Position numbers and translations under genes: made by a program
Notes under the pieces: generated by a model
The model's input: the letters and a program-made list of their open reading frames with translations, nothing else
Told to the model about the DNA's origin: nothing
Database searches by the model: none
In this document: piece after piece, positions 375 through 47,131 of the stretch
Layout of the letters: each line of letters starts with the position of its first letter
Numbering within the stretch: position 1 is the stretch's first letter
NCBI RefSeq assembly: GCF_000150275.1
Contig: NW_002060946.1
Location: 1,388,202-1,452,201 of the forward strand
DNA length: 64,000 bases
Source: Trichoplax adhaerens
Taxonomy: Eukaryota; Animalia; Placozoa
Reading direction: 5' to 3'

Positions 375-1251
375 ATGTCCAAATTCATTGCACTTGTTCT
401 CGTCATTGCGACTTTTCTACCCAATGGAATGTCATCGGTATAGCTAATTATTTAACTTATCTTTTTTAACCATTACGCTATCGATAGAACTATACTAAAA
501 ATTCCATTGCTACTTCGATATATAATCAATACGAAATGATATTGTTGTCTCATAATAGGTTATCAAACATCACCCCAAATCGTGTTATGAAGTCAAAGAG
601 TATCTTCAAGCGACTGAAAATGGATATTACAACTTATTCGATAGCTTAAGCAGTCCTTATACGACATATTGTGATTTCGAATCAGAACCACCGTTCGTAT
701 GGACATTAATAGAGTCATTTTCTTTAGAAGAAGGTCAAAAAACAATTAATCGAAAAGGCTTTGTTGAAAATCATCCAGTTGGAGAATGTCATCTGTCATG
801 GGCAGCATTTCGACTATCCAAAATCAGAATGGATACGGTTTTTGGCTCGTATGGATCAACACATTATCGTGCAACGTGTAATTTTAATGTTGTTAATGGA
901 ACAGGATTAGTAAATCGTGTCGATTACATGCGTGGAGAGTTTTGTCATAATACGTATATATTTAAGTCTTATGGTGCATATCTATGCCGTGTCGTTGATT
1001 ATGTGAATATACGTGGACACGTCTGTCGCAAGTGTACATTGCCATTTTATGCTACAACAACCTACCATAATCATATCGATCTTACCTATTCGGCTTCTCA
1101 CTGTAGCAAATTCGCTGTTCCAGATGCGATTACGAATGAAGATGTTTTCGGCCAATATTCTAATTCTAATCCCTTATTTTCGTGTGTAGCTAATAAAAAC
1201 TCTACGACCAATTGGTGGATCGGTGGAGCTTATGTTGCAGAAGCATTTTAG
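375..1251 (+). CDS. Secreted fibrinogen/intelectin-like Cys-rich protein, paralog 1 (intact, 251 aa; exons 375-437, 559-1251)
   Basis: Exon 1 MSKFIALVLVIATFLPNGMSS is a hydrophobic signal peptide. A phase-0 GT..AG intron (438-558) follows. Exon 2 reads VIKHHPKSCYEVKE..NGYYNLFD..PYTTYCDFESEPPFVWTLIES.. in frame with ORF 829-1251. PxSCxE..GxY..CD..WTLI is the motif that begins fibrinogen-related domains. 10 Cys in the mature protein. Confidence 0.88.
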
Positions 1252-2889
1252 AATTCTAGTATTTTGAAGACATGTATCCTGATCATCAGGGATGAAGGCC
1301 AACTTTACTGCATTTTACTCTAATTTAACTTTTGATCAATAATTATACTTGTAATGCAATATTAGATAGTGGTGTTAAATATTTTAGTACTAGCAGTATT
1401 TCTTAGGATATGACGTAAAAATCTTTCTGGAACAGTTTTTGAAAAGAAATCGACAAGTATAGCAGGGCACGATTTCTGGTAGATAAATGATCAATTTTAC
1501 GATAACTAATTGTAGTTATGTATAATTGCGCTGAGATTCTGAGTAGAAACTATATTACAAGCATACTCATATTTTTTTCGATATATCCTACGTTTGCTAT
1601 TGTAATCATTTTAGTTGCTCTGCACGTTAATATGCCATCATAGACTACAGGTATTTTCTTTTCTTGCTTATGCTACGAATTTAATAAATTTTTTTTTTAT
1701 CTTATTTGACAACTTGAAACAATATCACCTTAATAAATCAAATGTCAATAGATCTATTGAAACCAGAAAGGAAATGATAATAAATAGGGAGTAAATCCGT
1801 TATTCGTTACTAAATCGCATGATAAAGTGACATATTTTAGTCAGCTGCAGTTCTCTTAGCTACTGCTTCCGATAGTTTAATTGAAGGAGATTAGCATATT
1901 TTGTGCCTCAAATTTATTGCTTTGAAACCGGTTTAAGTGATGTGGATAAAGGTACTCGTATACTCGTAAATAAATTTCAGAGCAAATGGTTTTAAGTAAA
2001 ATCATTTCAAAGCTCACCAACACATTACAGTAACTGCAAGCGATTCAACTCCACTCCTCTAGATCAAGAGTAAAATATGTTTTTAAAATGATGTTGTAAT
2101 TTAAGGTTTTAGCGCATGTACTGCACTACCTTACTGGAGGGGCTTTATCATGTAATCAAGAATCGAAAAGGCATGAAACCGAGGTAAAGGCTAATTCATC
2201 TAAATTTGTTGCATATACAACAACGTTCTTTTATCACCATGGATGATTATAAAAATTTGCTTAGTAATGATAAAATTATTTCCGTAGAGTATGAATAAGA
2301 GTAAAGCCAATATGGAAGTCCTATTATATAATCGATATGATGTATTTTGTTCCAAAACAGGACTATGAGTCCACTTTGTATACACAGCAATTAATCATCT
2401 CTCTAGATGCTTTCTAACCACTGCGTGAAGATAATCAGTAATAGTTTAGATCCAAATTCAAAACGAGGCTAAGGGTAAGTATATCTCTTCAAGGTCATTA
2501 TAACTATTGTTCTCATTTAAGTAGGACCACCTACTTGAGATCAGCCTATAGAGAAGTTTTTAATTGTATTTTCTGCAAGTTTTTCAGTACACATCTCAGT
2601 AAATAATGTTAATCAATCTTTCGCTAATCGGGTAGTAATTATTAAACTACATAAATTACTGCTTCGAAAAATATCTATTAATTCGTGAACCGACTATCAC
2701 TTTCTGCTTATGAATGTCGTATAAGTATCTTATTCCTTCAAAGTATAGATGACTTTGCAAGTCAGTCCATTTTTTTCTACCTAAATATTTGATGTTTTGT
2801 CAAGACCAGGCAACCTTTAAAGCGTTAACTAGTTATTAATAATTAATAATAGTACGATAACGTGCTTATAATTTAGGCAATCCTTTAAC

Positions 2890-3284
2890 ATGACTTCTAC
2901 AGCATCTTTTGCGATAATAGCTATAGTGGTTGTGCCCGTAATCCTATCATCGGTAAGTTCAATCTTCAAATTTTTTGTTCTATTAACGATAGTTTACAAT
3001 CATAAGGATATGTGAAAAAGTAAAGTCTTATAACTATAATAATTTGAATTAATTTACACTAATAGGTATACTACAAGCCTCAATCCTGTTCTGAAGTCAA
3101 GCAATATCTAAAGCCTTCTGAGAGCGGTTACTTTACGTTATATGATTCTGGTGGCAACTCATTTAAAAGCTTCTGTGATTTTCAGCCGAAACACTGGTTT
3201 ACTTGGACTTTTCTTGAATCGTTAATAATAAAGATTGGCCAATATCAAGAGGTCGAGCCGATATGCATGATGCTGTATCATTAA
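2890..3284 (+). pseudogene. Truncated paralog 2 of the secreted fibrinogen-like family (exons 2890-2952, 3066-3284; 93 aa if translated)
   Basis: Signal exon MTSTASFAIIAIVVVPVILSS with GTAAGT donor. Exon 2 VYYKPQSCSEVKQYLKPSESGYFTLYDSGGNSFKSFCDFQPKHWFTWTFLESL.. loses homology and stops at TAA 3282-3284. No C-terminal region is recognisable downstream. Confidence 0.78.
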
Positions 3285-4963
3285 ATTTTACCTAAAGTGC
3301 ACATAATTCACAAGGAGGGATGACAGAGGGTTTTCGCGTCTAATTTTCTCTCGTTTTGTGGGAGAGATCAACGAAAATCTAAAATAATTCCTATTAATTA
3401 CCAATGTAAAGTTCAGATTACATTCATTCTTTTTCTATGGTTAAAATTATAATGAAATTATTATTACATATCGCCTCAAATTGGTACATGCATACTCAGT
3501 AATGTAACTTGATAATACCTAATAACTATTTTATATTAAAAATTATTGCATTATTTGCCTTAATCTTCGTCTTACGATGGTCCGTTATACAGTAAATTAA
3601 ACTTTTCTTCTGTAGTGAAGTCTCACCATTTCATCTCCGTAATTCTAATAAAACAATGTTACATACTTTGATTGACGAGCAATACATCAGTTTGACGGGT
3701 AACTACTTCTGACGAAACAGAACTGATTACTTTGCGCAGTAAAAGATAACTTAACTTTGTAATAAACTATAATAAAATCTGCTATTTGAGACTATACGTA
3801 CTCTGTATACTAGAATGATTATAAGCATAGGCCTAGTTTGCAAATTCTATTTTTTTCACAGCATAGCCAGAAAAGAATTCAATAATATGAAATAAACCCT
3901 TAAAATTAGTACTACTTTACGTCGTAAGAAGGTAAACATTGATGCAGGAGGAAGAAAAGGGAGATGAAGTCGTATTAAAACGGTCATCACAAAGCCTCTC
4001 TAATCTTGATAAAGAAGTAATCATCAATTGAATTTATGGTAATATAAGTAATTTACTAAGGTGCAAAATTTGTAACGAGGTTTGCTATAAGATGTTGTTA
4101 ATGAGTTTAGCCGCTCTAGAACGCAAAGGAAACTGGAGTGCATAGAACATTTGAATTAACTTTAAATTCATGCTAACCCTGTATCAAATTTTACATTAAG
4201 TTATGCACCTCAGTAAATCTTATGCAAGATGCTTCAACTCATGTAGTAAAAATGGGGATAATATGTACGGTAACGAAAGAGCAAAGACAGAGGAAATTAT
4301 AATTATTAACATTACTACTATAATCAGCACGACTAGAAGTTTCCACTTTGGACAACTAGTATGAAATCGTCTGCGCAAATAATTTTATCACATTGCATCT
4401 GGACCTTACTTTATAGCAGCAAATTATTGCGTCTGAACTACGGCATCTTATGAGTTTACATTCAATGTATCATAAAAAAGTTGTTGATGCCTAACTAGCA
4501 GCCCTGATATGATTAGCTCGAACTTGTGGCTCATCTTCTGCCATTTAATGTCAACGGTTTAATAAATGCAAGGCTCAAGTAATTACTCATTATTAGAGCA
4601 TTTAAAGTATTCGAAAGACAGCCTCTTGCGGAGATGACTTCACTGTTTATCAAAGTGAGGTAGACTACATGCCGTAATTCTCGGGCGTAGAAATCTTTAT
4701 TCTTTTAATTGTTGTATTATATCCAATGGCATTGGTATCTCAAATTGAGGCTAACAACAAAAGGAATTAATACAGTGATCTACCTATTCATCAACTCTAG
4801 ATGTTTGCAGTCATCAAGTACCGTACTATCAGAAATAATAAAATTTTTAAGTATAAATTTGAACAACATCAAAATATGCCAGTATTCTGCAGAAATTTTG
4901 TATTTCGAGAGCAACTTTTTGAATAGCTCAACTGAACACTCTTAACTACTCATTAAATTCAGG

Positions 4964-5814
4964 ATGGCAAAAACCTCACATCTTCTTCTTGCAGTCGTGG
5001 CTCTACTACCATTTGTTATATCTAAAGTAAGTTTCAATAGTCCTCCTATCTTCAATTCCGAGATTCTGCACTAATTGCGACTTCAATAATTTGAGTTTTA
5101 TTTATAAAATATTTACCGGTATATCCACTTCTGTAGATGCATCATAAACCTTAATCGTGCTATAAAGTCAAGCAATACCTTAATCCTACAGAAAGCGGGT
5201 TTTTTACTTTATACGATGTTAACAATAACCCATTCCGAAGCTTTTGCGATTTCGAATCAGAATCACCTTTCGTCTGGACATTAATCGAATCTTTAACATT
5301 GGAAAACGCTCAAAAAGCGCCTTTTCGTAAAAGCTTCGAGCTTAATCTTCCATTAGGCAAATGTAACACATCAATGTCTCTATTTCGTTTAACATCAGCT
5401 CATAGAAGCTCAATTTTAGGTGCGTACGGATCGAAACACTATCGTTCGACCTGCAATTTTGATATTGATATGGGAACTGGCTTAGCTAATCGTCGTGATT
5501 ATTTAAGATTTTCCGCATGTAAAGGCCTTTATATTCTTACCACTAACAGTGCTCGTTGTGTAGAAGTAGATTATATCAACGTTAGAGGGCAATCATGTAG
5601 AAAATGCAGCGTACCATTTTACAGTTCTACATCACAGCATCTTCACATCGATCTCATTGTGGCTAGTACCTACTGTAGAAAATTTGTTGTTACTGACCAT
5701 ATTGCAAATGAAGACGTTTTCGGTCACTATAGCAATCTTAATCCTACATTTTCTTGCGCCACAAATAAAAATTCAACTACTGCTTGGTGGATAGGAGGAG
5801 CATTCATCGAATGA
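4964..5814 (+). pseudogene. Paralog 3 of the secreted fibrinogen-like family with a single premature stop (exons 4964-5026, 5137-5814)
   Basis: Signal exon MAKTSHLLLAVVALLPFVISK. Exon 2 reads MHHKP*SCYKVKQYL..; TAA at 5152-5154 sits where paralogs have AAA/CAA. The rest is open to 5814 with all conserved motifs (WTLIES, HYRSTC, DYINVRG, CRKC, EDVFG, WWIGG). Confidence 0.78.
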
Positions 5815-7698
5815 ACTTTTCTCGTACCGTATTTGTCAGCACATGTTCGCGTCTCCGTTGATTGTTTCTACAAGATTTTCGATTATTTGCTATGAATATT
5901 AGATCTATTCTAGCACCATTTTAGCGTATTTAAATCAGATGTTATAACCACAATTCAACTTCGTATCATTATGGTAGATCTCTACTATTATTAACATGTA
6001 ATAGATCGCACTTGATCATGTAAGATAGCTGATAATGACTTCATGTGTGTTCTCTTTATCTTGCATCTCCTACCGAGATACCAATTAGCAAATTTTAGCC
6101 TTATAATAAGGCTTATTTATTTTAAAGTCAATTCTGTACATAAGTTAAACGATTAACCTTCCTAATATGAAAGGATATGAGTAATAAGTATGCATATGAT
6201 TATGCTTAAGCAGGTCAAATAAATACGAAGGCGAAAAGATGCATTTTACTTAGCGATCCTTGTCAGCACCTATAAAAGTAGGTTTCGCCGCGGCCCTTTA
6301 CATCTTAAAACTTCCTTTTTAATAATTTGACTATAAATGCGCATTATCGATATCGCTGATAGAAGTAATATTACAATGGACGAAAAATTCAAATAAAACT
6401 ACCAACTTCTGAATCCCAACGCAAGGAAATTAGGGGAAAGCACAGTTTATTATAATAACTATCTAAAAATTCTATTAATTGTACATGATAAATTACAAAA
6501 AGGGCAGAATTGCTGCCTTAACCAATCAAATTATCAACGTAAAATACGATTTACTGACGAATTAGGTAAATTATTTACTTCACCTTCTCTATCTTGAACT
6601 ACTAAGCTATTGAACTAGGCCATCTTTTATTTGCCACATAGAGCAGTAGTTAGATTACTATCTTACAGTACCGTTCTAAAGTAATCCTAATCAAACTAGC
6701 AATTGAACGCATATGATAAACAAATTATACCCTAGATTCCCGAAAGACTAAATTAATAAAAATTAACCGTAATTTAACTACAACAAGGATTTCCTACAGT
6801 ATACGAAAGGTAACTATAATAAAGCATTATAAAAGATCATCAATCTTAAATTAGAATCCTGATTAGAACTTTCAGGTTTTCAGTGTATTTCGTTATAAAA
6901 TAATGTCATTTCTGGTGTAACTTCTAGTCAAGTTAGCTGCTAATTTTAAGATTGCAACTTGATTGCTGTATTATCTAAATATATGGCCAAATTTACAATC
7001 TTACATTGTGCAACTCTTAGCAAAATTAAGTTAACGAATGCTATTAAATTCTAGTCAGAACAAAGTGGTCATGTTTACGATATATTAAAACACTAAGTAG
7101 AATCTGCCATAATTAAATCAAATTAAATTACTTTTTAAGTCACAATACTTACTGAAATTAAATAAACTTGAAGAATTCTAAAAATTAACCTTCATTACGT
7201 AGATTTTACTAAATTATCAATTAAAATACAGTATACTACATGATGTTGTATGGCTACATTTAGGACTACTGGTACCGATATGAAAATTATCTTACTTTAC
7301 AGCTTACACTTATAGCCATGTAGCAGCCTACAACTGTTAATGCTTTAGATTGAAAATTATTTACTAAATACAAGCAGACACTGTTCTTCTCAGCAAGAGG
7401 CTTAAAGATGTTGATGAACGCATCTCATCGGTTGCTTGTACCTCTTAATAACTTTTATCTTAAATACTTTAAGATTCGATCGATTTTTTTCAGAATAAAT
7501 TGCGATATACTGTATGTGAATGAAGTTTCGTCTAATATTAATACTAGTAGTTCGTATTAGTCATGTTTGAGTTGTGGCAATGAATAAGTGGAAGAATAAA
7601 ATCAGTATCGTCTCTAATATCAATTCAATCATAATACGGCTCGGTACTGCATCGGGAAGCAATAATTAACAACAATTATCTTAATATAGCTGTTGTGT

Positions 7699-7885
7699 TA
7701 AGAGCCTCAAATCATTTCTTTCCTAGGAGCAATGTCAAAATATCCATAGCACATATCGTAAGAATGATTGTTGAGCTACAACAATTGCCTTCATAGCTAT
7801 TTTATTAAGAGCCTCAAAATCATTTCTCCTACGAAAAAATGTCATAATATCCATCGTACACATAATAGGAATAATTGCTACACTG
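7699..7885. repeat. Diverged direct duplication, ~108-bp period, 2 copies
   Basis: TAAGAGCCTCAAA(A)TCATTTCT..AATGTCA.AATATCCAT.G.ACA occurs at ~7699 and again at ~7806. Confidence 0.6.
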
Positions 7886-8644
7886 TGTATGATCAGCTCA
7901 ATATCACTTCTTGTTCATTTACTAGCACAGAGAACTCGAAATAAGATGGAATAATTTTGCATAACAATGGAAGTAGAGCCAAGAAATGAATAATATGCAT
8001 CCAATAGAATTTCCGCTACCATTACCAGAATTCATTTACTATATTCTGGCTGATTAGTTGAATATCAAGCAAGTAACCAGGAAGCGGATTTCTAAAATTT
8101 TGGAATAAGGAAAGTTGCAATTTTCTCGTTAATTAAAAGATGTAACATTTATTAGGTACGATATCGATACAGTTTTAAGCAGAGGGGCTCAAATCTTTAA
8201 TTTGAAATTTTAGAATAGACTCCCATACTGCAATTTATCTCGTATTACAAAGGATTGACTAAGATTGTGTTTATTAAATGACATCAACAAATTTCCCGTT
8301 TTCAAATCACTGATTATGGGAACGAGGCTATGTTGATTTTATAATTGACAGCTAATCATTGAATCGCTCTTCGATGTCACCTCTACGCACATGATTTCTA
8401 TAGGCTCCATTTCCACTTTTTACTTTATAATCAGTTATTGTGAATGAATGTATCGAAGGTAAATAATTTCAATATCTAATTAATAGTCTTACAAGAGTCG
8501 AAAGAATATAGACTGATAGCGAGGACACCATTGTTCCCTAACGTAAATATTTCCCCTTATTCATGAGTGTCAAATATATTCTATTCACTAAAGCATTACA
8601 GTTAGAATCACTTATAAGTAATAAAACGTTCAGTATATAGCGGT

Positions 8645-8651
8645 TATAAAT
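8645..8651 (+). promoter_or_regulatory. Candidate TATA box of paralog 4 (similar TATAAAT/A at 228, 4852, and 13767 on minus strand)
   Basis: TATAAAW lies 75-150 nt upstream of the ATG in four of the six paralogs. Weak evidence in an AT-rich genome. Confidence 0.3.
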
Positions 8652-8719
8652 CAGAACTACGATTTTGTGACAAAGATCATTCGCTCGAAAATCATCTTTA
8701 CAAGATTGTAATTGCAGAC

Positions 8720-9571
8720 ATGGCAAAACTTTGTTTTCTAATCCTTATGGCGTTTGCCATCGTTCCTGCGGTAATGTCTTCGGTAAGTTTGCCATAATTA
8801 TATTATCCTATTATTCAAACGAGTGTTTGATTTCTTAAACAAGTTATTTTATTCTATCTTCATCGCACAAAGGTAATCAAGCATAAGCCTAAATCGTGCC
8901 ATGAAATAAAGGAGTTTATGCAAACAACCGAAAATGGATTCTATAACCTGTTCGATTCTAATCTCAGCCCATATACAACTTATTGCGATTTCGAATCGGA
9001 GCCCCCATTCATTTGGACCTTAATTGAATCCGTTACCTTACACGAAGCCCAACAGTTAGAAAACCGAAAATCTTTTTATTATGACCATCCTCTTGCTGAG
9101 TGTCATATAAATTGGAATAAATTCCGTTTATCTAAAGTTCGAATACAAAGTATCCAAGGTTCATACGGTACAACGCATTATCGAGTTACTTGCAACTTTA
9201 ATCCCGTTAATGGAACTGGCTTAACAAACCATCGCGATTACCTTCGAGGTTCTCTCTGTCAATACACGAACTTTTATAGTGCCACCTCAAGTTACTATTG
9301 CGTTCGCGTTGATTACATTAACGTTCGAGGAAAACTTTGCCGAAAGTGCAGGGTACCATTTTATGGAGGTAATACAAATCATCAGTTTGTTGATTTGGGA
9401 ACAGCAGCAACAGCTTGCGATAGATTCGACGTTCCGGATAAAATATCGAGTGAAGATGTATTTGGAAACTACAAAAATGTCAATCCACAGTTCTCTTGCT
9501 CCGCCAATTCCAATTCTACAACCAATTGGTGGTTAGGCGGTGCTTTCATTGCAGAACAATTAATATATTAA
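8720..9571 (+). CDS. Secreted fibrinogen/intelectin-like Cys-rich protein, paralog 4 (intact, 253 aa; exons 8720-8782, 8873-9571)
   Basis: Signal exon MAKLCFLILMAFAIVPAVMSS, then a phase-0 intron 8783-8872. Exon 2 VIKHKPKSCHEIKEF joins ORF 8918-9571 in frame. Same 10-Cys pattern; closest to paralog 1. Confidence 0.9.
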
Positions 9572-12500
9572 ACTATTTCTTTGATAGCTAGTTTAGTAAA
9601 CGATCCTTACTTTCTACTTTAGTACTCAACTACTGTCTCGCCGTCTTTATCAAGAGTCCGGTTATTAATTCGATAGAAATTAGACTATTAGAAGTAGTTA
9701 ATTTTCCTTCTAGCGGACTAGTTTTCATATTGTTGTTTGATAAAAATTTTAGTTTGCAAACGGAAAGGAAGCTGTGCTGTGAAATTGTAACCTTTACATC
9801 ATTTTTACCGTTACTGTATCCTCCTGTTCGTAATTTTTACGTTAAAATCTCCTGAAAATTCGTTAAATGTTATTGCAGCATAAAATTTAGTAGAAGAGGA
9901 ATCGATAGATAAGATTTCGACCATTTGAAACCTTAATAAAAATAAAATACGCCAACTTCCTTTAATAATTTTACTCTCATTGTGACTAACTAAAAATGTC
10001 TTCATTCAATATTCTCAACTACTATCCTTTTTACTGACCAACGATGCAATAATCTGCGCTAGCATATTAACAAAGATCTATTTGAGTACATAAGGCAATT
10101 GTAAGGAAAGTGTTAATCATCTTTCTTTCGTACTTATATCATATTCCTGATTATTGATGCCTTACTAATTCACTTTCTACCGACATACATGATATGATAT
10201 GTTACAATTTTAATTAGTTCAGGAATGTTCCGATTGTATTGAAATTAGTTACTGATATGTGGCTTACGTATGAATTTCGGCCAACACTTGATAGAAATTT
10301 ACACACAACTATCGCTATAGTTGTTCCAGTTAGTACTATCAATAAATATGGCAAACTGCCGCTACATTTGATTGCCCTAGGCCGCCGAAACTCTTTCTAA
10401 AACTACACACCTACGCCCTTCAACTGCATATGTAGTAATTGGCCAAAAGTTTTGTTACAGTAACCTACACTGTGGCCGTTGTCAATTAATATTAATTTTA
10501 GAGCTACACGCGTATTAACCAAAAGTATTTCAATTGAAACCACAAGTGCTTTTGCTCAAGTAATGTACATAGTAACTCTTTAGTCTCAAGCTGAGAAATT
10601 ACAGTGATACAAGGTCATTTGGCTCTCAAAATCCCTAACGCAACATTATTTTAATCCCGAATTCAACTTTTTTATGCTATTACTATTTCTTGATCAATTT
10701 ATGATTTGCAACTACGTGCTCATAGAATTCAAATAGCCCGAAAACGAGGCTTTAAAAATAATACCTTTGGCAGTAAACATAATAAGAATGGAATTTGGGC
10801 TAATGCTCGAATTGAGATAGTTAATTAAGTACAGAATTAGGTCGACAGCAGCTAAGATTTTTTATCAATTAAAAATATAGAGTATATTTATGCTAGTTTC
10901 GCTATCTTACGAACTCACGATCGAATCCTGAAGTTTTACCGAGTTGGATACACTGATTCGATAATTTTGGGATAAATTGAATCAATTTTCAGATGGTACC
11001 AGATATTGCATTCTACTGCATTATATTTTTCTCCCAGATTATAATACCACTACAGAGTATTATGTTGAGTTGATACGACTAACCTAACAGATGGTAATTT
11101 TGCAGGTGGCGATAACTGTACGCACCATGCTATCAGTTTAGTACCCTAACTACTGGAAATATTAAAAAGATCGTAAATGCTCTACATTAATAGTATAAAT
11201 AATTATATAATTTAATCTGTCTGGTTTATAGTTGCTAATCAAGTTGCTCGATATTAAATATATATCATGACGAAACCATTTTTGCTTTCTTTACCTCCTT
11301 CAGTTTAATACTTCTACAATATTTCAGAAAGTTTGAACGGCCAGAATACGAAGACAATTTTCATGTCGTGTTTATAAATATCTTGATCTTTCGACCATAC
11401 GAGTATGTTAATAGTATTTTTCTCCTCCCTAGACTACTGCTTTTCAGCTTTCTGACGGCACGATATTTTCAAGATTTATATATGAGAGAACAAACGGATT
11501 ACAGCGAGTAAAGTCTATTCGCATTTAAGTTGATATACCATGATGTGTTGTGATAGATAAGGCAATGAATTACTAAAACAAGTATATAATACGGTATTAC
11601 AGCTATACTATTTAAAAACAGTAAATCCTAAATAAAAAGTGATTTCTAGTAAGTCTACTAGGTGAAGTGTATCAAAATCCCTCGTGCCAACATTAACAAC
11701 TAAGCGTGGAAATACAACGGCTAGCACTGGAATTCATTGTAGAAATCTATTTAAGCTCGTGTGTTTGTAGAATAAATCAGTAGTTGCTCAAGAATGGTGT
11801 AAGACTAGTATAGTGAAGAATAGTGTAATATATTTAGTTATCTGTGGAGTTCAGTTAAGAAATCGAGTTCTCGTATATCACTAACATAGAAACTGGAGAT
11901 ACTGGAAGAAGTAGCCCGAGTTATTATAGTTACAAGAGAGATTCTTTACTTAGTTAATTTACGTTTCCTTTGTCATAAGAGAGGGTTGTGACAGTACTCT
12001 TTTTACAAATTTATAGAAAATCGGTGAATACTTCTTAAAATTTTAAGGAAGACTACGACTATAGATATATTTGTAGCACTGCTATTTTATCAATTAATGG
12101 CTTTATTGACATAAAATATTGCGGAAGTCCATCAAGCGTAAGACAGTGGAAATAAAGTGTGACGGAGGTGCACTGCCTTATGTGCTGGAATCGTCTGCAA
12201 TACCGGTATCGTTGATGTTTTTTATCGTGATCATGAATAGCAAAGGTTGAAGAATATGCCATAATAGAATTTCAAATATGTTTCATATTCGAATTATGAC
12301 GGTTATACGGTTTTTTATTGAATGGCCCTTGTACAATAACCATTATTTAAAGTTTTTAAATCAGTGTGTTACTGCAATAATTGCGTCTCACAATAACTAT
12401 CTTAGTCAAATGGTATTTTTTAAAAGGCTTTCATTACAAGTTAGTGATTTCAGCTAATTACAGTAGTTTAGGGCTAACAACCCGTACACTACAACAAGGT

Positions 12501-12818
12501 TTTAGAAATAGTAGAGCAATAATTAATTACTACAAGAATCTAGTCTAAAATTGAAAGTATTCCGAGCTCAAAGCGAAGTGAAGTCTCTTCTCCATCGTAG
12601 GCTCATCTCTGCAGTTCTTATAAACATTTCGTTAAATCCATTTATGACAACTTGATTCATCTACAATCAGACATGAGTCATCAAACAAAAATACTTTTTT
12701 CAAATGGTACATCATTATCTTCTACAGTCTAAAATAATTCTACTTAAGATGTCGCTACTCTTCTATCAACGTCTAACCCCTTTCGTATAATCAAATATGG
12801 GTGCATCACTACAGTTAC

Positions 12819-13679
12819 TTATTTCAGGTATGGGCCGCCGATCCACCAATTAGTTGTTGATGCGCTTGTTGCAGTACAAGAAAAGAAAGGATTAACTTTC
12901 CAATAGGCACCAAAAACATCTTCACTTTGTACTTGATTAGGAACTTCAAATTTTCCGCAGGACGCTGCCGCCTGCGGAAGATCTATATGTAAATGCCAAA
13001 TATTACTAGTCCAGAATGGAATGCTGCATTTTCTGCAAGAATGCCCGCGAACATTGATATAATCGACTGTCACACACGCCGCATTAACCTTAACAGCGAA
13101 AAAAAAATTAACTGCGCAAAATGATGCCCTTAAGTAATCACGACGATTTTGCAGTCCTTTCACGCTTTGGCTATTAAAGTTACATGTCGCACGGAAATGA
13201 GTCGAGGATGGAGCATTTTTTAATGCCACCATTCTAGCTTTCGAAAGTCGATAGCATGACCAATTAGGTGTGCACTCGCTCGATGGAACATTGTAATAAA
13301 ATCCCGTACTAAATTTAGGGGTTCGTGCATTGGTTGTTGATAGTGATTCTATAAGTGTCCATGCGAATCCAGGATCAGATTGGAAATCGCAAAATGCTAG
13401 ATAAGGTTTACTGATAGAGTCGTAGAGTGTAAAATATCCATTGCGCGACGTATGGTATAGATTTCTTACGGCAGCGCATGTTATCGGTTTAGGTTTAACT
13501 ACCTAGTCATTGGTATCAAGAAACACAGTACTTCGTTATAATATCGAGTTATATTCGTATTCAGCTATGCAGATGCATTTCGCTAAGTGTTGTTTTAATT
13601 TTAAGGAACTTACCGCTAGTCTTACTGTTGGAAGTAGTACAACAAGGCTTAACCACGTTAATAAGGTACAGTTGGTCAT
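12819..13679 (-). CDS. Secreted fibrinogen/intelectin-like Cys-rich protein, paralog 5 (intact, ~249 aa; exons 13679-13614, 13502-12819)
   Basis: Signal exon MTNCTLLTWLSLVVLLPTVRLA (alternative ATG at 13685), then a phase-0 intron. Exon 2 VVKPKPITCAAVRNLY..NGYFTLYD..AFCDFQSDPGFAWTLIESL is in frame with ORF 12819-13232. Confidence 0.88.
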
Positions 13680-16530
13680 TCTCATCAAATTATCAGTAAC
13701 CAAGTTGCAATGTCTTGAAGGTAAATAGGTGAAAATTAACTGCAGTATCAATTTGAATCCTTTTATATGTTTGCCTTCTTGTAACGATATGTTTAGAATA
13801 CTATTAATTTATGAGATATTCCAACATACTGTAGACAGAAGAAAATTTATGCAATTGAATGTAGTTATAAGCCACAATTGATACTAATTGCTGGCATTAT
13901 TTCTGTACAGAGAATGCTTCTGGAAAATCTTGTGGAAAGAATAATACTCCGCTAATTAAAGGATCTCTAAAGATATTTACATGTCGCTATTAGCTACCTT
14001 GAGCTTCCATTAGTAAATACAATAATGTCTTATTTTATAATTTTGAACGAGTAATTGTAAGGCAAACTATATTAGCAACATACCCTTGTATGTGTAACAA
14101 ACTGAGACTCGAAAGATAAAAAATAAGTATGTTTGTGCAATTTCAGTTCACTTTGTTGTTTCACGGATCTGTATCTCTGTCCTGTTTTTACTTTCGGACT
14201 TTTACATTTTCGCAACAGTTTTAAGGGAATGAACAACAGCCTTATTTGTAACCAATTAAATTAAAATATATGTTGTCCTAACAACTACCGGTTGACAGCT
14301 ATGTCTTTAAAATACTTAAGGAAACTACTTACTCAGTTAATTATTGCTGTACATTTAGATAATTATGTACGACGTTAGAAAATCTGATTTATTGAATATT
14401 ATAATTTATAGACAATCTCATAGGGCGTATGCTCGTAGTGGTATAAGTAAATTATTATGTACATTATGTCAAACTCTAAGGCAAATACTAAGGAAAAAAT
14501 AGCGCCACAGTAGTTATTTCTAGGAATCATACAATCAGCATATTGATTTCATTATGGCTATATTTGCTATAGATGTGGCTGTAACGGTAATATTAAATTG
14601 TCTCTAGTTGTGTGGAACATGGTGTCAGTTCCTCCTATGTTAGCGCTATATATATATATTGATTATCTATTGGTGGGAATCGGAAAGATGTAGCGGTGTT
14701 AATGGGCCTCTTGGCGAGAAGTGCAGGTGGAAGTCCTAGAAGATTGACTATTGGTCGAGGAGCTGAGAAACAAGGTTCGAGGCGATATAAACAAGACGCG
14801 GATCATGTTAAAGGGCTTCTATACTGTAGCCGTTACGATATACTATTTTGTATAGGGAAAATTGTGATAGAGTTTTGATGTAAATATTTACATCAAAGAT
14901 AGATATATAAGGAGGCTAATATAATTGTAGAGGTAGATAGATTCATTCATAAGTTAGCTTGAAGAAGACATAGTAGATATTCTTTTGATATTATATCCGC
15001 AGTTTTTAATGCCTGTATTTTAACATCGTAATAAACTTTTTATATTAACCGAGTCTTACTCATTCTTGTGAGTCGATTGTAGTTAATATAGGGAAGTAGT
15101 ATTACAGTGGCCTTTGAGATACTTCAAGAATGGAGGTTTTAAATCCATTCCTGAGAAAAATAGCAGCAATTTCGAAACTGATCACACGTACTGTACAGGA
15201 TTGCTGGACTTTGGCCGGGCAATACGCGTATTGGCCAACTTCGGGTTTTGGCCGTAACCTAAATACCTATAACGACTAAGCTAGTGGTTGATTACAGTAT
15301 AATTTTAATTGCGATGAATTATAGCTAATCGTAAAGCCATTTACTGTTAATAAGAACTGTTTGCTTTTCGAAAGAAATCTTTGTAATATTGTAGACAACT
15401 GGATCGCATTCATTCTTCTGTGATAGATATAGTGATTCTGAATTTCATGAATAAGTATCGAAACTATGAGCAAATGTATTTATAGCTTTTTTTGTGTTTC
15501 AGCTGCTATATACGTTATCACATAGTCGCATATACAGTACAACGGCAAGGTATAATTGTGACTAAAACTTAACCATATGAAGAGAATCAATAAAAAATAG
15601 GTTTGTGCCTGTTAGTACTGTATGGCTCTAATTCATCTTCACATGTAATGCATAGCAATAGCATGTATTTTACGTATCTACTCAAGCACATATACATATG
15701 GGCCCTATCACATGAATGTAATCTTTACCTGACGATTTTATAAAACTAATCGGCTATGAAAGCTCTACAGTTTTTGTTGCTACGTTGATTCATTTTCAGT
15801 TTTACCTTTCCTTTTTAATTCCTCATCTCCGAAAACAAGTTAAGCAGATCGATCGATTTATACAATGGGAAACATTGATTATTTACATGAGGAGGAGTAG
15901 TTTAATTTAGTGGTTTAAGTCTAATTATCGGCTACCTTGTTGGCGTAAATAGATCGGGCTAAATATATCAAGAACTGTCGACAGGCGCTGGTGATTTACT
16001 TCGAGCTCAGGGTATCTTACTTTAGATTCTTGTTACTAATTAATTATCGCTCTACTTTTCTAAATTCTTATAGTAAAAGCCATGTTTACTTTTCTATCTT
16101 AACTGAGACTATTATTGTAAGAATTAGACTTCTAAACAGATAGGATACTTCGGATACTTTTCTTACAACTATTACAAAGTGTATGTGATTCCTGAAAAAT
16201 AATTTACGCCAATTTCATAAAGAAAACCCTATTTAGTGTGTGACGGTACAACAACGCTCTGAAAACACGCTTTCTTGAGAATATTTCTAGTTTCGAAACG
16301 ATAGTAAACTACAATTATCTACTTAAAAAAGTACTTAAGTGGCAATTATTTACTTTTTTCATCTATTAATAATTAGCATTTCTAATAGATTTTTAAAGAA
16401 ATTTTAAATTCTTGTATATCGTAGTAAGTAGACGAACATAGGAGAATTCCTAAACCTAATATATAGATTCTACTTGATATTTTTATTTTTCATTTTCAAA
16501 AGCCACATACTTATACGAAACTTAGTGAAA

Positions 16531-17394
16531 ATGGCTAAATACTCGTACGCTTTACCAATATGTTTGATCCTGATTGCTATACTGCCAATGGCAAGGCAGG
16601 CGGTGAGTTACTTGACATATTGAAACATAATACTGTAGTAATACTATTCAATAAGTCATAACGATATATTTATTCTTCATGATGCTGATTAGGCGGTAAA
16701 ACTGAAGCCAACAACATGCGCAGCCATTACGAGCATCTCGTATCTCGCGAAATGGATATTTTGCAATGTATGATTCTACTTATAAATTCTATATTGCATT
16801 TTGCGTCTTTCAATCAGATCCAGGATTTGCATAGACACTTGTAGAATCACTCTCTACTCTCTATGCACGAACGACTAAATTTCGTAAGAGCTTCTATTAT
16901 AATATCCCAACCAATGAGTGTATGCCAAACTGGTCAAATTATCGACTATCTAAGGCTGGAATGACTACAGTAAAAAATACTCCATCATCAACTCATTTCC
17001 GTGCTACGTGTAACTTTGATGATTAAAGCGAGAAAGGATTGAGGAATCGTCGCGACTATCTAAAGGCATCATTTTGCGAATACGATTATTTTTTGATTTC
17101 TAAGCTGCTTGGACTTGTGTTCTAGTCGATTATATCAACAATCGCGGATCTTCCTGCAGCAACTGCCGTATTCCTCTCCGAAGTGATATTAATTGGCATT
17201 CACATACAGATCCACAGCTCGTTAGAGAGTCTTGTGGAAAGTAGTTTAATGTCTCAGATGCAATAGCTAGCGAAGACGTATTTGGTAGTTGTTATAATTT
17301 TAACCCAAGATTTTCTTGTGTCACTAATAGTTCAACAACAAAAAATTGGTGGATTGGTTGTCCTATCACCGAGGTACCCTTTTCTACCGACTAA
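16531..17394 (+). pseudogene. Decayed paralog 6 of the secreted fibrinogen-like family (exons 16531-16602, 16693-17394)
   Basis: Signal exon MAKYSYALPICLILIAILPMARQA. Exon 2 is homologous to paralog 5 along its length (KPTTCAA, QSDPGFA*TLVES, STHFRATCNF, NRRDYL, VDYINNRG, SEDVFG, NWWIG). It carries at least two frameshifts and three in-frame stops. Confidence 0.85.
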
Positions 17395-19408: not shown

Positions 19409-22400
19409 TTATCCAGAACCAGTACTCCTTGCTAATGCTTGAGTATAACAGCCTGCATAAGCCTCTTGGAAAGCCTTCGTAGAAGATCCAATACGATTTT
19501 CCATTTGTACAATTTCATTTGAATAATCTTGTAAAAGTTGTTGTTGCCGCGCTATATGATCCCGTAATGCTATAGATCCGTAACGTACGATATTTTATCA
19601 GTTTCAGCGACATATAGATGCTAGTACGATAATTTTTTCAAATCTTACCTTGTATAGTTTGTAATTTATTCTGTGCCTCCGTTCTTATCCTGGTAATCAT
19701 TCCTAATAAGGTACGCACTTGATCCGATGCAGGTTTAACTGCGGTTACGATTTTTGCTCTTCTGGCGGATATGTTTTGATATCTCGCATTAAAATCCGTT
19801 AAATCCTGTGAGCAATATTATGTCAACATAAAACGCCATAGTAAAGTAGCAATTAGAACTATCACAAAGATTAACTTAAGAGTACTTTAATGTACAATTT
19901 TGTATTGACAATTTAAAATGTGTTTACAAACCTGTCTAGTTATGTTCATTTCACTTTCAGTAGTTGTTGCTGTATCACTAGCCAATTGTGTATAATTTCT
20001 TACTGTACTTTCTTCATTTTGCATAATCTCACTTGTTGTATTCATTCCTTGAATATTGGCTATTGCACTATTTGTAGAAGCATTCATCTGCTTAATATTA
20101 TTATCAATCTAAGAAAATGAAGGCAAGAATATGAAAATGTTAGTAAAGCAATGATTAAAATACATATATTAGAAAATTATGCTCTGGCTGAGTATGAAGA
20201 AACTGAACAAGTTCATGTTCATGTCTACTACCAACAGATTTATGAAAGTGATCATTGAATAAAAATTAAATTATTTACTTGATTGACTGTCACGTTTGTT
20301 CTCTTGAAGATACCCCAGAGTATAGCTAGGTTATCTGAAGCTCTTGTCTTTTCGATATTATATTGATCTATTCGAGCTTGTAAATCTGCAATCGACACTT
20401 CAGCATTATCAATTGCCGCCCTAAAATAAATTATAACGGAAGTATTTTTTTGAATTCAATTAACAGCGTAAATTAAAGTACTGTATAAACATTATAAGAA
20501 AGCTTCTGAAGAGAAATATGATGAAATACAGAAGGACGAACCGAATGCCAGCAATTCGAGCACGAATTGCTGATACAAGGCTGACAATAGAAGAAGAATT
20601 TTGCTGTCCAGAATTGCCTTCTAGAACTTGCAATGTAGCATTGAGTTGATCAGATAATCTTACAATCTCAGGCAGATTAAGAGCTAATTTAATGTGGGTA
20701 ATTTCGATGTTAATACGATCAATATTGGAAGCGTTAGGCCATTGCTGATTTAAGAAGGTGGATAGTCGATTAGTTACTCGACTAATATTATTATATGCTC
20801 GTGACCAAATCTGTGCCTCGCCGTTCACTTGGACAATAAAATTTAAAATCTCTCTTAATGTTGCGTTGTTACGTTGTGATAAGTCATTTCTAACTCTTAA
20901 TGCTAAATCCAAATCACGTAACTTATCAACTAAGCTAATGCTAGTATCTCTTGCAATCCTGTTACTTCTTGCAATCAAATCAACTGCTCCATCACAGTTA
21001 TTAATAGTATTGCCACATAAAGAGCAGCCCATACCGCCACATGTTGTATCACACTGATTCGCTTTTCTTCCGCAGAGAAAGCGATTAATATCTGCCACCA
21101 TGTTCTGTAGTTTTGATGTTTCATTCTGTAACTTTCTGATACTTTGCCAATCAATTGCTTGACGATCTTGGATATTGGTCAAACGTGGTCGGAGAATGCG
21201 TATCTTGATTTCTGCGGCTTTAATTTTATTACCTGCAATTAATGCTCGTTGCCTATACCTTTCAGCAACTTGAGAAGAATAATTTAAACTGGCTAAAGCA
21301 CCAATTGCCGATGATTCAGATATATTGGTGAATTGGATTCGTATGCTATTAACTTGATCATCTTGATTAGTAAGTGTTGTATTGTCATTTGTTATAGTTG
21401 TCCTCATATTCGGTATTTCACGATTAACGGAGCTTAAATTTTGAAAAAGCTGTTGATTTATTTGTTCATATTGCTGTAAATTACTGCTTGCATTTGTTAA
21501 TGTACGACGTATAGCGTCTAATTTGTCCATCGTTACTCGCTTATTCTTCAAGAAATTTTCAACTGTTGTCATATCGTTCTCCAGTTGTCGTAACCCACCA
21601 AAGCCGAATATGAAGCTACCATTAGCAATTAAGTTCTGTGCCCTTTCGACTTCTGTAGAAGCAATGTCATTAAAGTCTGTGATTCTTTTATTCCAATCAA
21701 AATAACAAACATGGCATCTTCTACAGCTAGGGAATGTTCCTTGGTATCCATCTGCACACCGATCACATCTGAAACCTCCAGCTGCTGCTATACAATAACA
21801 CTGACCAGTTTTACGATCACATTCAGTGCTAAGAGAACCCATTTTATTGCAGTTGCAAGCTAATTGAAATTAAAATCATCCATAAATATGAGTACAATTA
21901 CCAAGTCAGGTATATATTCAAATGCAAACTGCAGTACAGACTATAAATTTTATTTTAAATCCGATTATTAGAGGTTATAATAATTATGCGTTACATGTTA
22001 AAATTCTTAGTCAAATTTATGAAAAAATTTATTTTATTGCAGACTAATTCAAAACTTCTTTTTCGATGATAGCGACTACTAAACTCACTTAGTTATTATA
22101 TTTTGAGCAATACGAATAATGACTTTGGTAAAAACTGACCGTAACATGTAGTCGATGGATTACCCCAAAAGCCATCTTCGCAGTCACAACATTTATCGCC
22201 ACTGTATCCTTTAATACAACTGCATTTACCAGTAACCTGAAGATAGTTATTTACAATTAGGAGCAAATCGATATCTGAGAAACAAATCGTCATCATTCTA
22301 CTGGAATAGTTATTATCACCCTACCGCATCACAATTGGCTTGTAAAGAATTATTACGGCAACAACTACATGGTTGGCAACCCTTTCCACTGGTGATATTC

Positions 22401-46266: not shown

Positions 46267-46683
46267 CAATGACGCATTTAGTCCAATCAACCATTACTAT
46301 GAATGCATGCCATCTTACAGCATTGCTTAGCATTAATTTTGTCATGCAGATGCAATCCAGCTGCGATAGACCAAAGCTCCTTCTGCAGTGAGCTGCGATG
46401 GCCTAAGACCGCCAGTTCACCTTAGCATCCCTGCTTGAATCTTTATCAACCGCAATAATAAGACAGATGGTCTACAATGACGCATTTAGTCCAATCAACC
46501 ATTGCTATGAATGCATGCCATCTTACAGCATTGCTTAGCATTAATTTTGTCATGCAGATGCAATCCAGCTGAAATAGATCAAAGCTCCTTCTGCAGTGAG
46601 CTGCGATGGCCTAAGACCGCCAGTTCACCTTAGCATCCCTTGTTGAGTCTTTATCAACCGCAATAATAAGACAGATGGTCTAC
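46267..46683. repeat. Tandem duplication, 208-bp unit x2
   Basis: CAATGACGCATTTAGTCCAATCAACC...GACAGATGGTCTAC begins at 46267 and again at 46475, with only a handful of substitutions. Confidence 0.92.
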
Positions 46684-46862
46684 CATGGTCTCCAGTACTA
46701 TGACGTAACCATGACACTCGTGTCTAATACACGAGTTCGATTTGGAGTGTATTGACTGTCGATTGTTTTTCCACTGTCCTCCTGACAGGTGAAAGAAAAA
46801 AAAAATGCATGTTTGACTGGCAGTATTGTGCGCGGTACAGCACTGCGAATGCTGTACTGTAC

Positions 46863-47131
46863 CTAGACCTGTTTGGCGTGCTTGTGCCAGCTGACGCTTG
46901 TGGTTTACAAAGTGACCCTAGGTTTGCCTCTGACTTTACTACGGGTGACGGTGTGGACTTGAGCCTCTTTAGTGTGAGCTGCATGTATAGTACGATCTAG
47001 ACCTGTTTGGCGTGCTTGTGCCAGCTGACGCTAGTGGTTTACAAAGTGACCCTAGGTTTGCCTCTGACTTTACTACGGGTGACGGTGTTGACTTGAGCCT
47101 CTTTAGTGTGAGCTGCATGTGTAGTACGATC
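46863..47131. repeat. Tandem duplication, 134-bp unit x2
   Basis: CTAGACCTGTTTGGCGTGCTTGTGCC...GTACGAT begins at 46863 and again at 46997, with about three substitutions. Confidence 0.92.

What the first reader, a model, noticed from the sequence alone, without database searches (positions are those of the whole stretch)
375..17394. Six-copy cluster of secreted proteins with a fibrinogen/intelectin-like head and an unnamed Cys-rich body: candidate innate-recognition repertoire
Seen: six paralogs in 17 kb share one architecture, a 21-24-codon signal exon, a phase-0 intron and one exon for the mature protein. The ORF track catches only fragments of four of them. Known: the first ~55 mature residues (PKSCxE..GxYxL..CDF..WTLIES) match the start of fibrinogen-related domains, as in ficolins, intelectins and tachylectin-5. 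The remaining ~175 residues (RLSK, THYRxTCNF, RDYLR, VDYINVRGxxCRKC, HIDL, EDVFGxY, NPxFSC, STTNWWIGG) lack the canonical fibrinogen motifs (EFWLG, FSTxDxDND, GGWWY) and are not intelectin sequence as I know it. Inference: this is a distinct, poorly described stand-alone secreted lectin-like family that is locally expanded and turning over (3 intact, 3 dead). That pattern is typical of pathogen- or food-recognition genes.
Basis: partly seen in the sequence, partly recalled or inferred. Interest (0 to 1): 0.8.

Follow-up and report, generated by a model that had tools for sequence, protein, structure and literature searches.

The report
Known Trichoplax intelectin-like lectin gene array
The six genes are real, but they are the right-hand end of a 16-copy array of secreted fibrinogen/intelectin-fold proteins in the placozoan Trichoplax that was published as "putative intelectins" in 2019, so the finding is already known.

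Summary
The window (Trichoplax adhaerens, contig C1411) holds six paralogs, each with a 21-24-codon signal exon, a phase-0 GT..AG intron and one exon for the mature protein. Three are intact (c1, c4, c5) and three are dead (c2, c3, c6).

Two corrections:
- The six are only the right end of a ~59-kb array of 16 loci, 7 intact and 9 dead.
- The "unnamed Cys-rich body" is not a separate module. An AlphaFold2 model (pLDDT 90) puts the whole mature protein into one fibrinogen-related fold. Intelectins are the best structural match (Z 10.4-10.7, 185-190 residues). Unrelated folds score Z 3.2 or less.

The family is already published. Kamm et al. 2019 list these very genes (TrispH2_001770-001773) among 31 "putative intelectins". 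Mayorova et al. 2025 show a close paralog, Ta 60661, expressed in dorsal epithelial secretory cells.

- The pseudogene census. Two of the published 31 are fragments.
- The duplicates are old (dS>1) and under purifying selection.
- Full-domain relatives occur in cnidarians, sponges and bacteria.

Glycan binding remains untested. The scan's other notes lie on this same window only: s1-774266 is this stretch itself and s1-774310 lies inside c1. No note on other DNA turned up.

The parts
375..437 (+). c1 signal-peptide exon (21 codons), = TrispH2_001770 / P0002
   Evidence: P0002 prefix maps here; GT donor follows
559..1251 (+). c1 mature-protein exon, intact (230 codons plus stop)
   Evidence: P0002 suffix of 230 aa maps exactly; AG acceptor; HMM E 2.6e-92
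2890..2952 (+). c2 signal exon (pseudogene; published as the truncated model TrispH2_001771)
   Evidence: Kamm Dataset S4 shows the same truncated product
3066..3284 (+). c2 remnant of the mature exon: about 65 homologous residues, then a stop; the remaining ~160 residues are missing
   Evidence: tblastn covers only query residues 1-64; HMM positions 12-68 only
4964..5026 (+). c3 signal exon (21 codons), GTAAGT donor
5137..5814 (+). c3 mature exon. One nonsense codon, TAA at 5152-5154, in the PKSC motif; otherwise open. An unannotated pseudogene.
   Evidence: The same TAA is in Trichoplax sp. H2, and no gene is called there in H2.
8720..8782 (+). c4 signal exon (21 codons), = TrispH2_001772 / P0001
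8873..9571 (+). c4 mature exon, intact (232 codons plus stop)
   Evidence: The AlphaFold2 model of P0001 has pLDDT 90.
13614..13679 (-). c5 signal exon (22 codons), = TRIADDRAFT_55274 / TrispH2_001773 / P0010
12819..13502 (-). c5 mature exon, intact (227 codons plus stop). It belongs to the other subfamily (clade B).
16531..16602 (+). c6 signal exon (24 codons) of a pseudogene
16693..17394 (+). c6 mature exon, dead: at least 2 frameshifts and at least 3 in-frame stops
   Evidence: The match is split over two frames and stops are visible in the translations.

Best explanation
These are tandemly duplicated genes for small secreted proteins of about 225 mature residues and 10 cysteines. The whole mature chain is one divergent fibrinogen-related domain whose nearest solved relatives are the intelectins (X-type lectins). 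This is the family already published as 'placozoan putative intelectins'.

Shown here or in the literature:
- the gene structure and the signal peptide;
- homology of the N-terminal subdomain;
- the fold of the full domain;
- purifying selection on the intact copies;
- membership of the published gene list;
- expression of a close paralog (Ta 60661, sister of c1) and of ten other family members in dorsal epithelial secretory cells.

Inferred:
- The proteins are packed into epithelial secretory granules and released onto the animal's surface or mucus.
- There they bind glycans of microbes, for defence, management of the microbiota or perhaps recognition of biofilm food.
- Binding would use the loops of the C-terminal half, the equivalent of the ligand-binding P subdomain of other fibrinogen-related domains.
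- Paralog-to-paralog variation is concentrated in those loops, so the array would offer a panel of specificities.
For: Gene structure.

N-terminal homology: intelectins score E 3.4e-7 and 1.3e-9, and fibrinogen beta, angiopoietin, tenascin, ficolin-3 and tachylectin-5A are also hit. All matches are confined to profile positions ~20-74.

Fold:
- AlphaFold2 gives pLDDT 90.1 and pTM 0.86.
- All Foldseek top hits are fibrinogen-related domains.
- VIA-align gives intelectin/XEEL/lamprey lectin Z 10.4-10.7 over 185-190 residues spanning model residues 25-243, and ficolin/angiopoietin Z 9.2 or less.
- In the exhaustive search of 48,161 chains the top 7 are all fibrinogen-related, the next hit is the procollagen C-propeptide (Z 4.5), and the score then drops to Z 3.2.
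- The ESM Atlas gives the same neighbours.

Selection: omega is 0.10-0.28 for every pair where dS is computable.

Variable loops: the longest variable stretch is P0001 residues 155-163, with further variable columns in the C-terminal-half loops.

Literature:
- Kamm 2019 Dataset S3C lists TrispH2_001764-001773, with signal peptides and HHpred support for a fibrinogen-related domain.
- Mayorova 2025 shows FISH of Ta 60661 in dorsal epithelial cells.
- c1 is sister to Ta 60661 with support 98/94.
Against: - No glycan or microbe binding has been shown for any member of this family.
- Sequence similarity to intelectins or ficolins stops after ~55 residues, so conservation of a known ligand or calcium site cannot be shown.
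- In the published alignment the human NTEHH ligand segment faces gaps and non-matching residues.
- Family-wide motifs that might form a site (HxHxD, EDxFGxY) are themselves degenerate in several intact Trichoplax copies: c4, u3, u4, u5 and u9.
- I found no expression data for c1, c4 or c5 themselves.
- Fibrinogen-related domains also serve non-lectin roles, as in angiopoietins, tenascins and FGL1.
Confidence: 0.6

Rival explanations
1. They are true intelectin orthologs. They would use the same calcium-dependent pocket as human intelectin-1 and bind exocyclic 1,2-diols of microbial sugars.
For: - PANTHER files them under the intelectin family (Kamm 2019).
- Intelectins are the best structural match by about 1.2-1.5 Z units and 20-40 more aligned residues than ficolins.
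- An ESM Atlas neighbour cluster is named intelectin-1a-like.
Against: - Profile searches match intelectins only in the first ~55 residues.
- The domain is about 225 residues against about 280, so about 90 intelectin residues have no counterpart.
- Identity in the structural alignment is 13-16%.
- The published alignment shows the human ligand-site segment unmatched.
- The family's own conserved motifs are shared with bacterial, sponge and cnidarian proteins and are not intelectin motifs.
Confidence: 0.12
2. They are secreted fibrinogen-related proteins with a non-immune role. Possible roles: structural or organising components of mucus and glycocalyx, sensors of food biofilm for external digestion, or ligands for cell-surface receptors as with angiopoietin, tenascin or FGL1.
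For: - The fold is shared with non-lectin fibrinogen-related domains at Z 8-9.
- Different family members are expressed in mucocytes, gland or peptidergic cells as well as in dorsal epithelium.
- Overall omega is low and shows no sign of an arms race.
- Relatives in cnidarians and Trichoplax sit at the C-terminus of EGF, PAN and discoidin multidomain matrix-like proteins.
Against: - Large tandem expansions with many pseudogenes and loop-focused variation are more typical of recognition repertoires.
- Stand-alone secreted fibrinogen-related proteins of invertebrates are mostly lectins (established knowledge; Hanington and Zhang 2011, as cited).
Confidence: 0.25
3. The intact-looking copies are decaying relics or gene-model artefacts with no function.
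For: Nine of the 16 loci in the array are dead. I found no transcript assembly with exactly these proteins (two genomic contigs only).
Against: - The frames are open, all 10 cysteines are kept, and omega is 0.1-0.28 despite dS>1.
- The c4 protein is identical in H1 and H2 although its mature exon differs at three bases between them.
- Splice sites are conserved.
Confidence: 0.03

Closest known systems
Placozoan 'putative intelectins' of Kamm et al. 2019 (BMC Genomics 20:5); Ta Intelectin 60661 of Mayorova et al. 2025 (PLoS One 20:e0311271)
   Same: These are the same genes. TrispH2_001770, 001771, 001772 and 001773 are c1, c2, c4 and c5, and the 'cluster of 9' is this array. The size (~250 aa), signal peptide, short N-terminal fibrinogen-related match, 10 cysteines and proposed defence role all agree.
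   Different: - Two of the published models here (001769 = u10, 001771 = c2) are pseudogene fragments, and seven further dead loci, including c3 and c6, are not among the paper's putative intelectins.
- The paper assigns only ~70 residues to the fibrinogen-related domain. The model here assigns the whole chain to it.
- In the parts I read, the paper does not mention the relatives outside placozoans that were found here.
Intelectins / X-type lectins (human intelectin-1 4WMQ/4WMY, Xenopus XEEL 4WMO, lamprey serum lectin 7E1E)
   Same: They are secreted and share the N-terminal motif (C..CD..WTL). They are the best structural match over the whole domain (Z 10.4-10.7, rmsd 3.7-3.8 A, 185-190 residues).
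   Different: There is no detectable sequence similarity after ~55 residues. The proteins here are ~55 residues shorter and 13-16% identical. Ligand and calcium residues are not demonstrably conserved. The characteristic motifs here (STHxRATCNF, RDY, INVRGxxCxxC, EDxFGxY, STTNWW) are not intelectin motifs.
Canonical fibrinogen-related lectins (ficolins, tachylectin-5A, FIBCD1) and other fibrinogen-related domains (angiopoietins, tenascin, FGL1)
   Same: The same fold (Z 8-9.2, 144-176 aligned residues) and N-terminal subdomain homology (E 2e-6 to 5e-2).
   Different: Pfam Fibrinogen_C does not hit the window proteins even at E 1. Sequence similarity does not extend into the B or P subdomains, so the canonical motifs cannot be matched. 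There is no collagen or coiled-coil oligomerisation region.
Bacterial 'fibrinogen-like YCDxxxxGGGW domain' proteins (NCBIfam NF040941)
   Same: The full-length domain is shared, not just the head. A Komeilibacteria protein matches profile positions 16-228 at E 5.6e-48, and the body motifs are conserved.
   Different: - The bacterial copies are modules inside giant surface proteins of 1400-1900 residues with DUF2341, LamG or EGF domains.
- They keep the canonical GGGWT motif.
- They form their own clade (support 0.99).
- P0001 scores 24.7 bits, below the model's cut-off of 30.

Membership tests
Published placozoan intelectin-like family (Kamm et al. 2019) | Listed locus tags; about 250 aa; signal peptide; N-terminal short fibrinogen-related match; 10 conserved cysteines; clustered genes | tested here: met
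   TrispH2_001770, 001771, 001772 and 001773 are in Dataset S3C/S4. P0001 and P0002 carry those names and map exactly to the window. c4 has 10 Cys.
Fibrinogen-related domain superfamily | N-terminal A-subdomain sequence signature (Cys ... CD ... WT-L) | tested here: met
   Family profiles hit intelectins, fibrinogen beta and gamma, angiopoietins, tenascins, MFAP4, ficolins and tachylectin-5A at this segment.
Fibrinogen-related domain superfamily | Whole-domain fold (A, B and P subdomains) | tested here: met
   AlphaFold2 pLDDT 90. The top 7 of 48,161 chains are all fibrinogen-related, Z 10.4-6.7, against 3.2 for the first unrelated fold.
Fibrinogen-related domain superfamily | Pfam PF00147 Fibrinogen_C at the gathering threshold | tested here: not met
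   No Pfam family at E up to 1 for four copies. Relatives hit PF00147 only at profile positions 3-50.
Fibrinogen-related domain superfamily | Canonical P-subdomain calcium/ligand motifs | tested here: inconclusive
   There is no sequence alignment beyond profile position ~74 to any solved fibrinogen-related domain. A residue-level structural superposition is not available from these tools.
Intelectin / X-type lectin | Full-length sequence homology to the intelectin domain | tested here: not met
   Matches to 7E1E, 4WMO and 4WMQ cover only ~55 residues, even with an 83-sequence profile.
Intelectin / X-type lectin | Intelectin fold as the closest structure | tested here: met
   Z 10.4-10.7 with 185-190 aligned residues, above every other fibrinogen-related domain by more than 1 Z. 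About 90 of ~280 intelectin residues are unmatched.
Intelectin / X-type lectin | Ligand-site calcium ligands and aromatic box (N260, E262, E274, H263, W288 and Y297 of human intelectin-1; numbering from my own knowledge of Wesener et al. 2015) | not testable with these tools
   The tools return no coordinates or per-residue structural alignment. In the published sequence alignment the human NTEHH segment faces gaps or non-identical residues, but that region aligns unreliably.
NCBIfam NF040941 GGGWT_bact | Score at or above the curated cut-off (30 bits) | tested here: not met
   P0001 scores 24.7 bits, E 1.7e-5. The bacterial relatives score 102-128 bits.

The most novel reading that the evidence does not exclude
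The placozoan proteins are not intelectins in the strict sense. They would belong to a separate, unnamed and ancient branch of the fibrinogen-related superfamily that has its own conserved body motifs (STHxRATC, RDY, NVRGYxCxxC, HxHxD, EDNFGxY, STTNWW). This branch is shared by sponges, cnidarians, placozoans and bacteria, with no named bilaterian among the hits I looked up. It would carry a ligand site different from both the ficolin type and the intelectin type, that is, a new lectin class. Chordate intelectins might descend from it, or it might have moved between bacteria and early animals.
Probability: 0.35. Interest if true: 0.5.

Novelty: already known. Interest (0 to 1): 0.22.

Why it matters
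Placozoans lack Toll-like and NOD-like receptors and complement, so expanded secreted lectin-like families are the main candidates for how this very simple animal tells microbes apart. That point, and these genes, are already in the literature.

- The whole protein, not just its head, has a fibrinogen/intelectin-type fold.
- The published gene count includes dead fragments, and the array is more than half pseudogenes.
- The duplicates are old and constrained.
- The same full-length domain occurs in sponges, cnidarians and bacterial surface proteins. This makes the name 'intelectin' questionable.

The worthwhile follow-up is the family's binding site and ligands, which nobody has tested.

Tried and rejected
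- Pfam on four mature exons found nothing, even at E 1.
- A single-sequence PDB search gave only a marginal intelectin hit, E 0.05. Profiles were needed.
- A deeper 83-sequence profile was built to extend the alignment with intelectins into the body and so test the calcium/ligand residues. The match stayed confined to ~55 residues, so that test failed.
- The search for related loci with the family alignment in bacterial and archaeal genomes matched 22 patterns but confirmed no relative. The patterns it chose were specific to the animal type.
- Positive selection: pairwise dN/dS is uninformative at site level because dS is saturated. I make no claim of diversifying selection.
- Expression of the window's own genes: none of the locus tags occurs in the searchable literature or in the text and held supplement of Mayorova 2025.
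- An alternative splice acceptor that would rescue c3 was considered and rejected. The acceptor TAG|ATG at 5134-5137 puts the TAA in frame five codons into exon 2.
Searches used single exons by reference, or the database proteins P0001, P0002 and P0010, whose two parts map exactly onto the window.

Full report
**What is there**

The window is AT-rich eukaryotic DNA, about 33% G+C. It lies at C1411:1388202-1452201 of a 105.6-Mb, 1414-contig assembly. Its proteins carry Trichoplax adhaerens and Trichoplax sp. H2 names. The assembly size is, from my own knowledge, that of the T. adhaerens H1 draft.

tblastn with the longest open frame finds six related loci between 375 and 17394. A six-frame HMM scan finds none elsewhere in the window. 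Each locus has three parts:
- a short exon of 21-24 codons encoding a hydrophobic signal peptide;
- an intron of about 90-120 bases in phase 0, read as GT..AG at c1, c3, c4 and c5;
- one exon for the whole mature protein.

The state of each copy:
- c1, c4 and c5 are intact. They equal the database proteins P0002 (TrispH2_001770), P0001 (TrispH2_001772) and P0010 (TRIADDRAFT_55274) residue for residue.
- c2 keeps only about 65 mature residues.
- c3 has one nonsense codon, TAA at 5152-5154.
- c6 has several frameshifts and stops.

The orthologous 20-kb region of Trichoplax sp. H2 (L007) is 99.6% identical and carries the same c3 stop, so the lesions are real.

I searched exons by reference, or used the database proteins that map exactly onto the exons.

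**The cluster is larger than six**

A search of the window's own genome shows that the array continues about 42 kb to the left of the window. After fetching that DNA I count 16 loci between C1411:1346613 and 1405559:
- 7 are intact: u3, u4, u5 (TRIADDRAFT_63826), u9 (TRIADDRAFT_55268), c1, c4 and c5.
- 9 are dead: u1, u2, u6, u7, u8, u10, c2, c3 and c6.

The genome holds roughly 36 full-length matches in all, plus fragments. These include a second array of about 11 more distant copies on C1403.

A tree splits the array into two old subfamilies:
- Clade A holds c1, c3, c4 and u10, together with the dispersed genes Ta 60661 and TrispH2_003506.
- Clade B holds u2-u5, u9 and c5.

Every paralog pair for which dS could be computed has dS above 1, with omega 0.10-0.28; the most distant pairs were too saturated to compute. 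The duplicates are therefore old, and the intact ones are under purifying selection. This is long-term birth and death, not fast turnover.

Among the seven intact copies the longest variable stretch is the loop at P0001 residues 155-163. Shorter variable runs lie at 113-116 and 223-225, and the column marks show further variable stretches in the C-terminal half. This partly agrees with the scan's note s1-774310.

**What the protein is**

Pfam finds nothing. Family profiles hit solved intelectins, and then fibrinogen beta and gamma, angiopoietins, tenascins, MFAP4, ficolins and tachylectin-5A. The best hits are the lamprey lectin 7E1E, XEEL and human intelectin-1, at E 3e-7 with 35 sequences and 1e-9 with 83 sequences. 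Every match covers only the first ~55 mature residues.

The structure tells a different story:
- An AlphaFold2 model of P0001 built on a 35-sequence alignment is confident (pLDDT 90.1, pTM 0.86).
- All Foldseek hits are fibrinogen-related domains.
- VIA-align puts intelectins first: Z 10.4-10.7, rmsd 3.7-3.8 A, 185-190 residues aligned across model residues 25-243. Ficolins, angiopoietins, tenascins and FIBCD1 reach Z 9.2 or less.
- In the exhaustive comparison with 48,161 chains the first seven are all fibrinogen-related (Z 10.4 to 6.7). The next is the related procollagen C-propeptide (4.5). After that nothing exceeds 3.2.

The 'Cys-rich body' is therefore the remodelled B and P part of a single fibrinogen-related/intelectin-like fold, not an extra module.

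**It is already published**

Kamm et al. 2019 (PMC6321704) describe 31 'putative intelectins' of Trichoplax sp. H2. Their description matches this family:
- about 250 aa, with a signal peptide;
- a fibrinogen-related match restricted to about 70 N-terminal residues;
- ten conserved cysteines and a well-conserved C-terminal part;
- five clusters of 2-9 genes;
- a proposed role in extracellular defence.

Their Dataset S3C lists TrispH2_001764, 001765, 001766, 001768, 001769, 001770, 001771, 001772 and 001773, which is this array.

Mayorova et al. 2025 (PMC12013895) show by FISH that Ta 60661 is expressed in dorsal epithelial secretory cells. In my tree Ta 60661 is the sister of c1. They also report ten family members specific to 'upper epithelial' metacells, and others in mucocytes or gland-type cells. 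I found no expression data for c1, c4 or c5 themselves.

(a) Two of the published 31, 001769 (u10) and 001771 (c2), are pseudogene fragments. Seven further dead loci in this array are not among the paper's putative intelectins.

(b) The whole chain, not 70 residues, belongs to the fold.

(c) The family is not confined to placozoans. The profile finds 1123 representative clusters at E 1e-3 or better, and 291 at 1e-30 or better. Named members come from the following groups:
- stony corals: Acropora, Montipora, Porites and Oculina. The Acropora protein has an EGF domain in front, and an Atlas cluster of cnidarian relatives carries EGF and PAN;
- Nematostella;
- the jellyfish Rhopilema, where the domain follows EGF and discoidin domains;
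- the sponges Oscarella pearsei and O. lobularis;
- a foraminifer transcriptome;
- bacteria.

The bacterial case is solid. A 1912-residue Komeilibacteria protein lies on a 200-kb contig between other giant DUF2341/LamG surface proteins and a transposase. It matches profile positions 16-228 at E 5.6e-48. The body motifs are conserved from bacteria to Trichoplax. NCBIfam names only the 46-residue head of these bacterial proteins, as NF040941.

In a quick domain tree the bacterial-type copies form one clade (support 0.99) and the placozoan copies another (0.84). The tree has no reliable root, so no direction of transfer can be read from it. A lamprey-lectin paper has already proposed a bacterial or phage origin of intelectin domains (PMC9682848).

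**How it most likely works**

The proteins are secreted, disulfide-rich, single-domain and fibrinogen-related, and are made by epithelial secretory cells.

By analogy with intelectins, ficolins and invertebrate fibrinogen-related proteins, they most likely bind carbohydrate structures on microbes. The loops of the C-terminal half would do the binding, and the paralogs would offer different specificities.

The fold, secretion, selective constraint and expression of close relatives are shown. Ligand binding, calcium dependence, oligomerisation and an immune rather than feeding or matrix role are all inferred.

I could not test whether the intelectin-type or the ficolin-type site is kept. Sequence alignment fails in that region, and the tools give no residue-level superposition.

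The alignment-based locus scan found nothing.

**Verdict**

This is a real and correctly described gene cluster, but it is a known family in a known place. The interest that remains is a side issue: whether this widespread, unnamed branch of the fibrinogen-related superfamily has its own binding site and a bacterial connection.

Noticed in passing
outside the window: G000:C1411:1346613-1388201 (loci L001-L006): Ten further loci of the same family lie to the left of the window. Four are intact (u3, u4, u5, u9) and six are dead. The array therefore has 16 loci over ~59 kb and is more than half pseudogenes.
   Followed up: yes
G000:C1403:1516197-1549667: A second tandem array of about 11 more distant family members (E ~1e-58). 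Most have uninterrupted frames of 244-300 aa, so they may lack the signal-exon intron.
   Followed up: no
G000:C1403:1795088-1795726; proteins P0155/P0227 (TRIADDRAFT_64387): The same domain also sits within long open frames or multidomain proteins in Trichoplax: a 1219-aa open frame, and a protein named EGF-like domain-containing or Notch by its sources.
   Followed up: no
L008:6001-11739 (Candidatus Komeilibacteria MAG, JBLYPW010000002.1): A 1912-aa bacterial surface protein carries a full-length copy of the domain, with the body motifs conserved. It is flanked by two more giant DUF2341/LamG proteins and a Y1 transposase.
   Followed up: partly
protein P0109 (Nonionella stella transcriptome, EukProt): Foraminifer transcriptome proteins with this domain group next to the placozoan clade in a quick tree, with weak support. 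This could be contamination or a real protist member.
   Followed up: no
window 19600-28100, minus strand: A laminin gene (Laminin_N and laminin-EGF exons; 1717-aa product called in the H2 ortholog) directly follows the array.
   Followed up: partly
window 46267-47131: Two adjacent two-copy tandem repeats (208-bp and 134-bp units, 96-97% identical) sit in the only G+C-rich patch of the window (42% against ~33%). A 205-aa open frame with no Pfam match lies next to them at 47205-47822.
   Followed up: no
window 59019-59710: A tandem array of a ~100-bp unit (6.8 copies, 85% matches).
   Followed up: no
window 36677-40845, minus strand: Three long open frames (231, 358 and 535 aa) with no Pfam match lie in a stretch with strong negative AT skew.
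   Followed up: no
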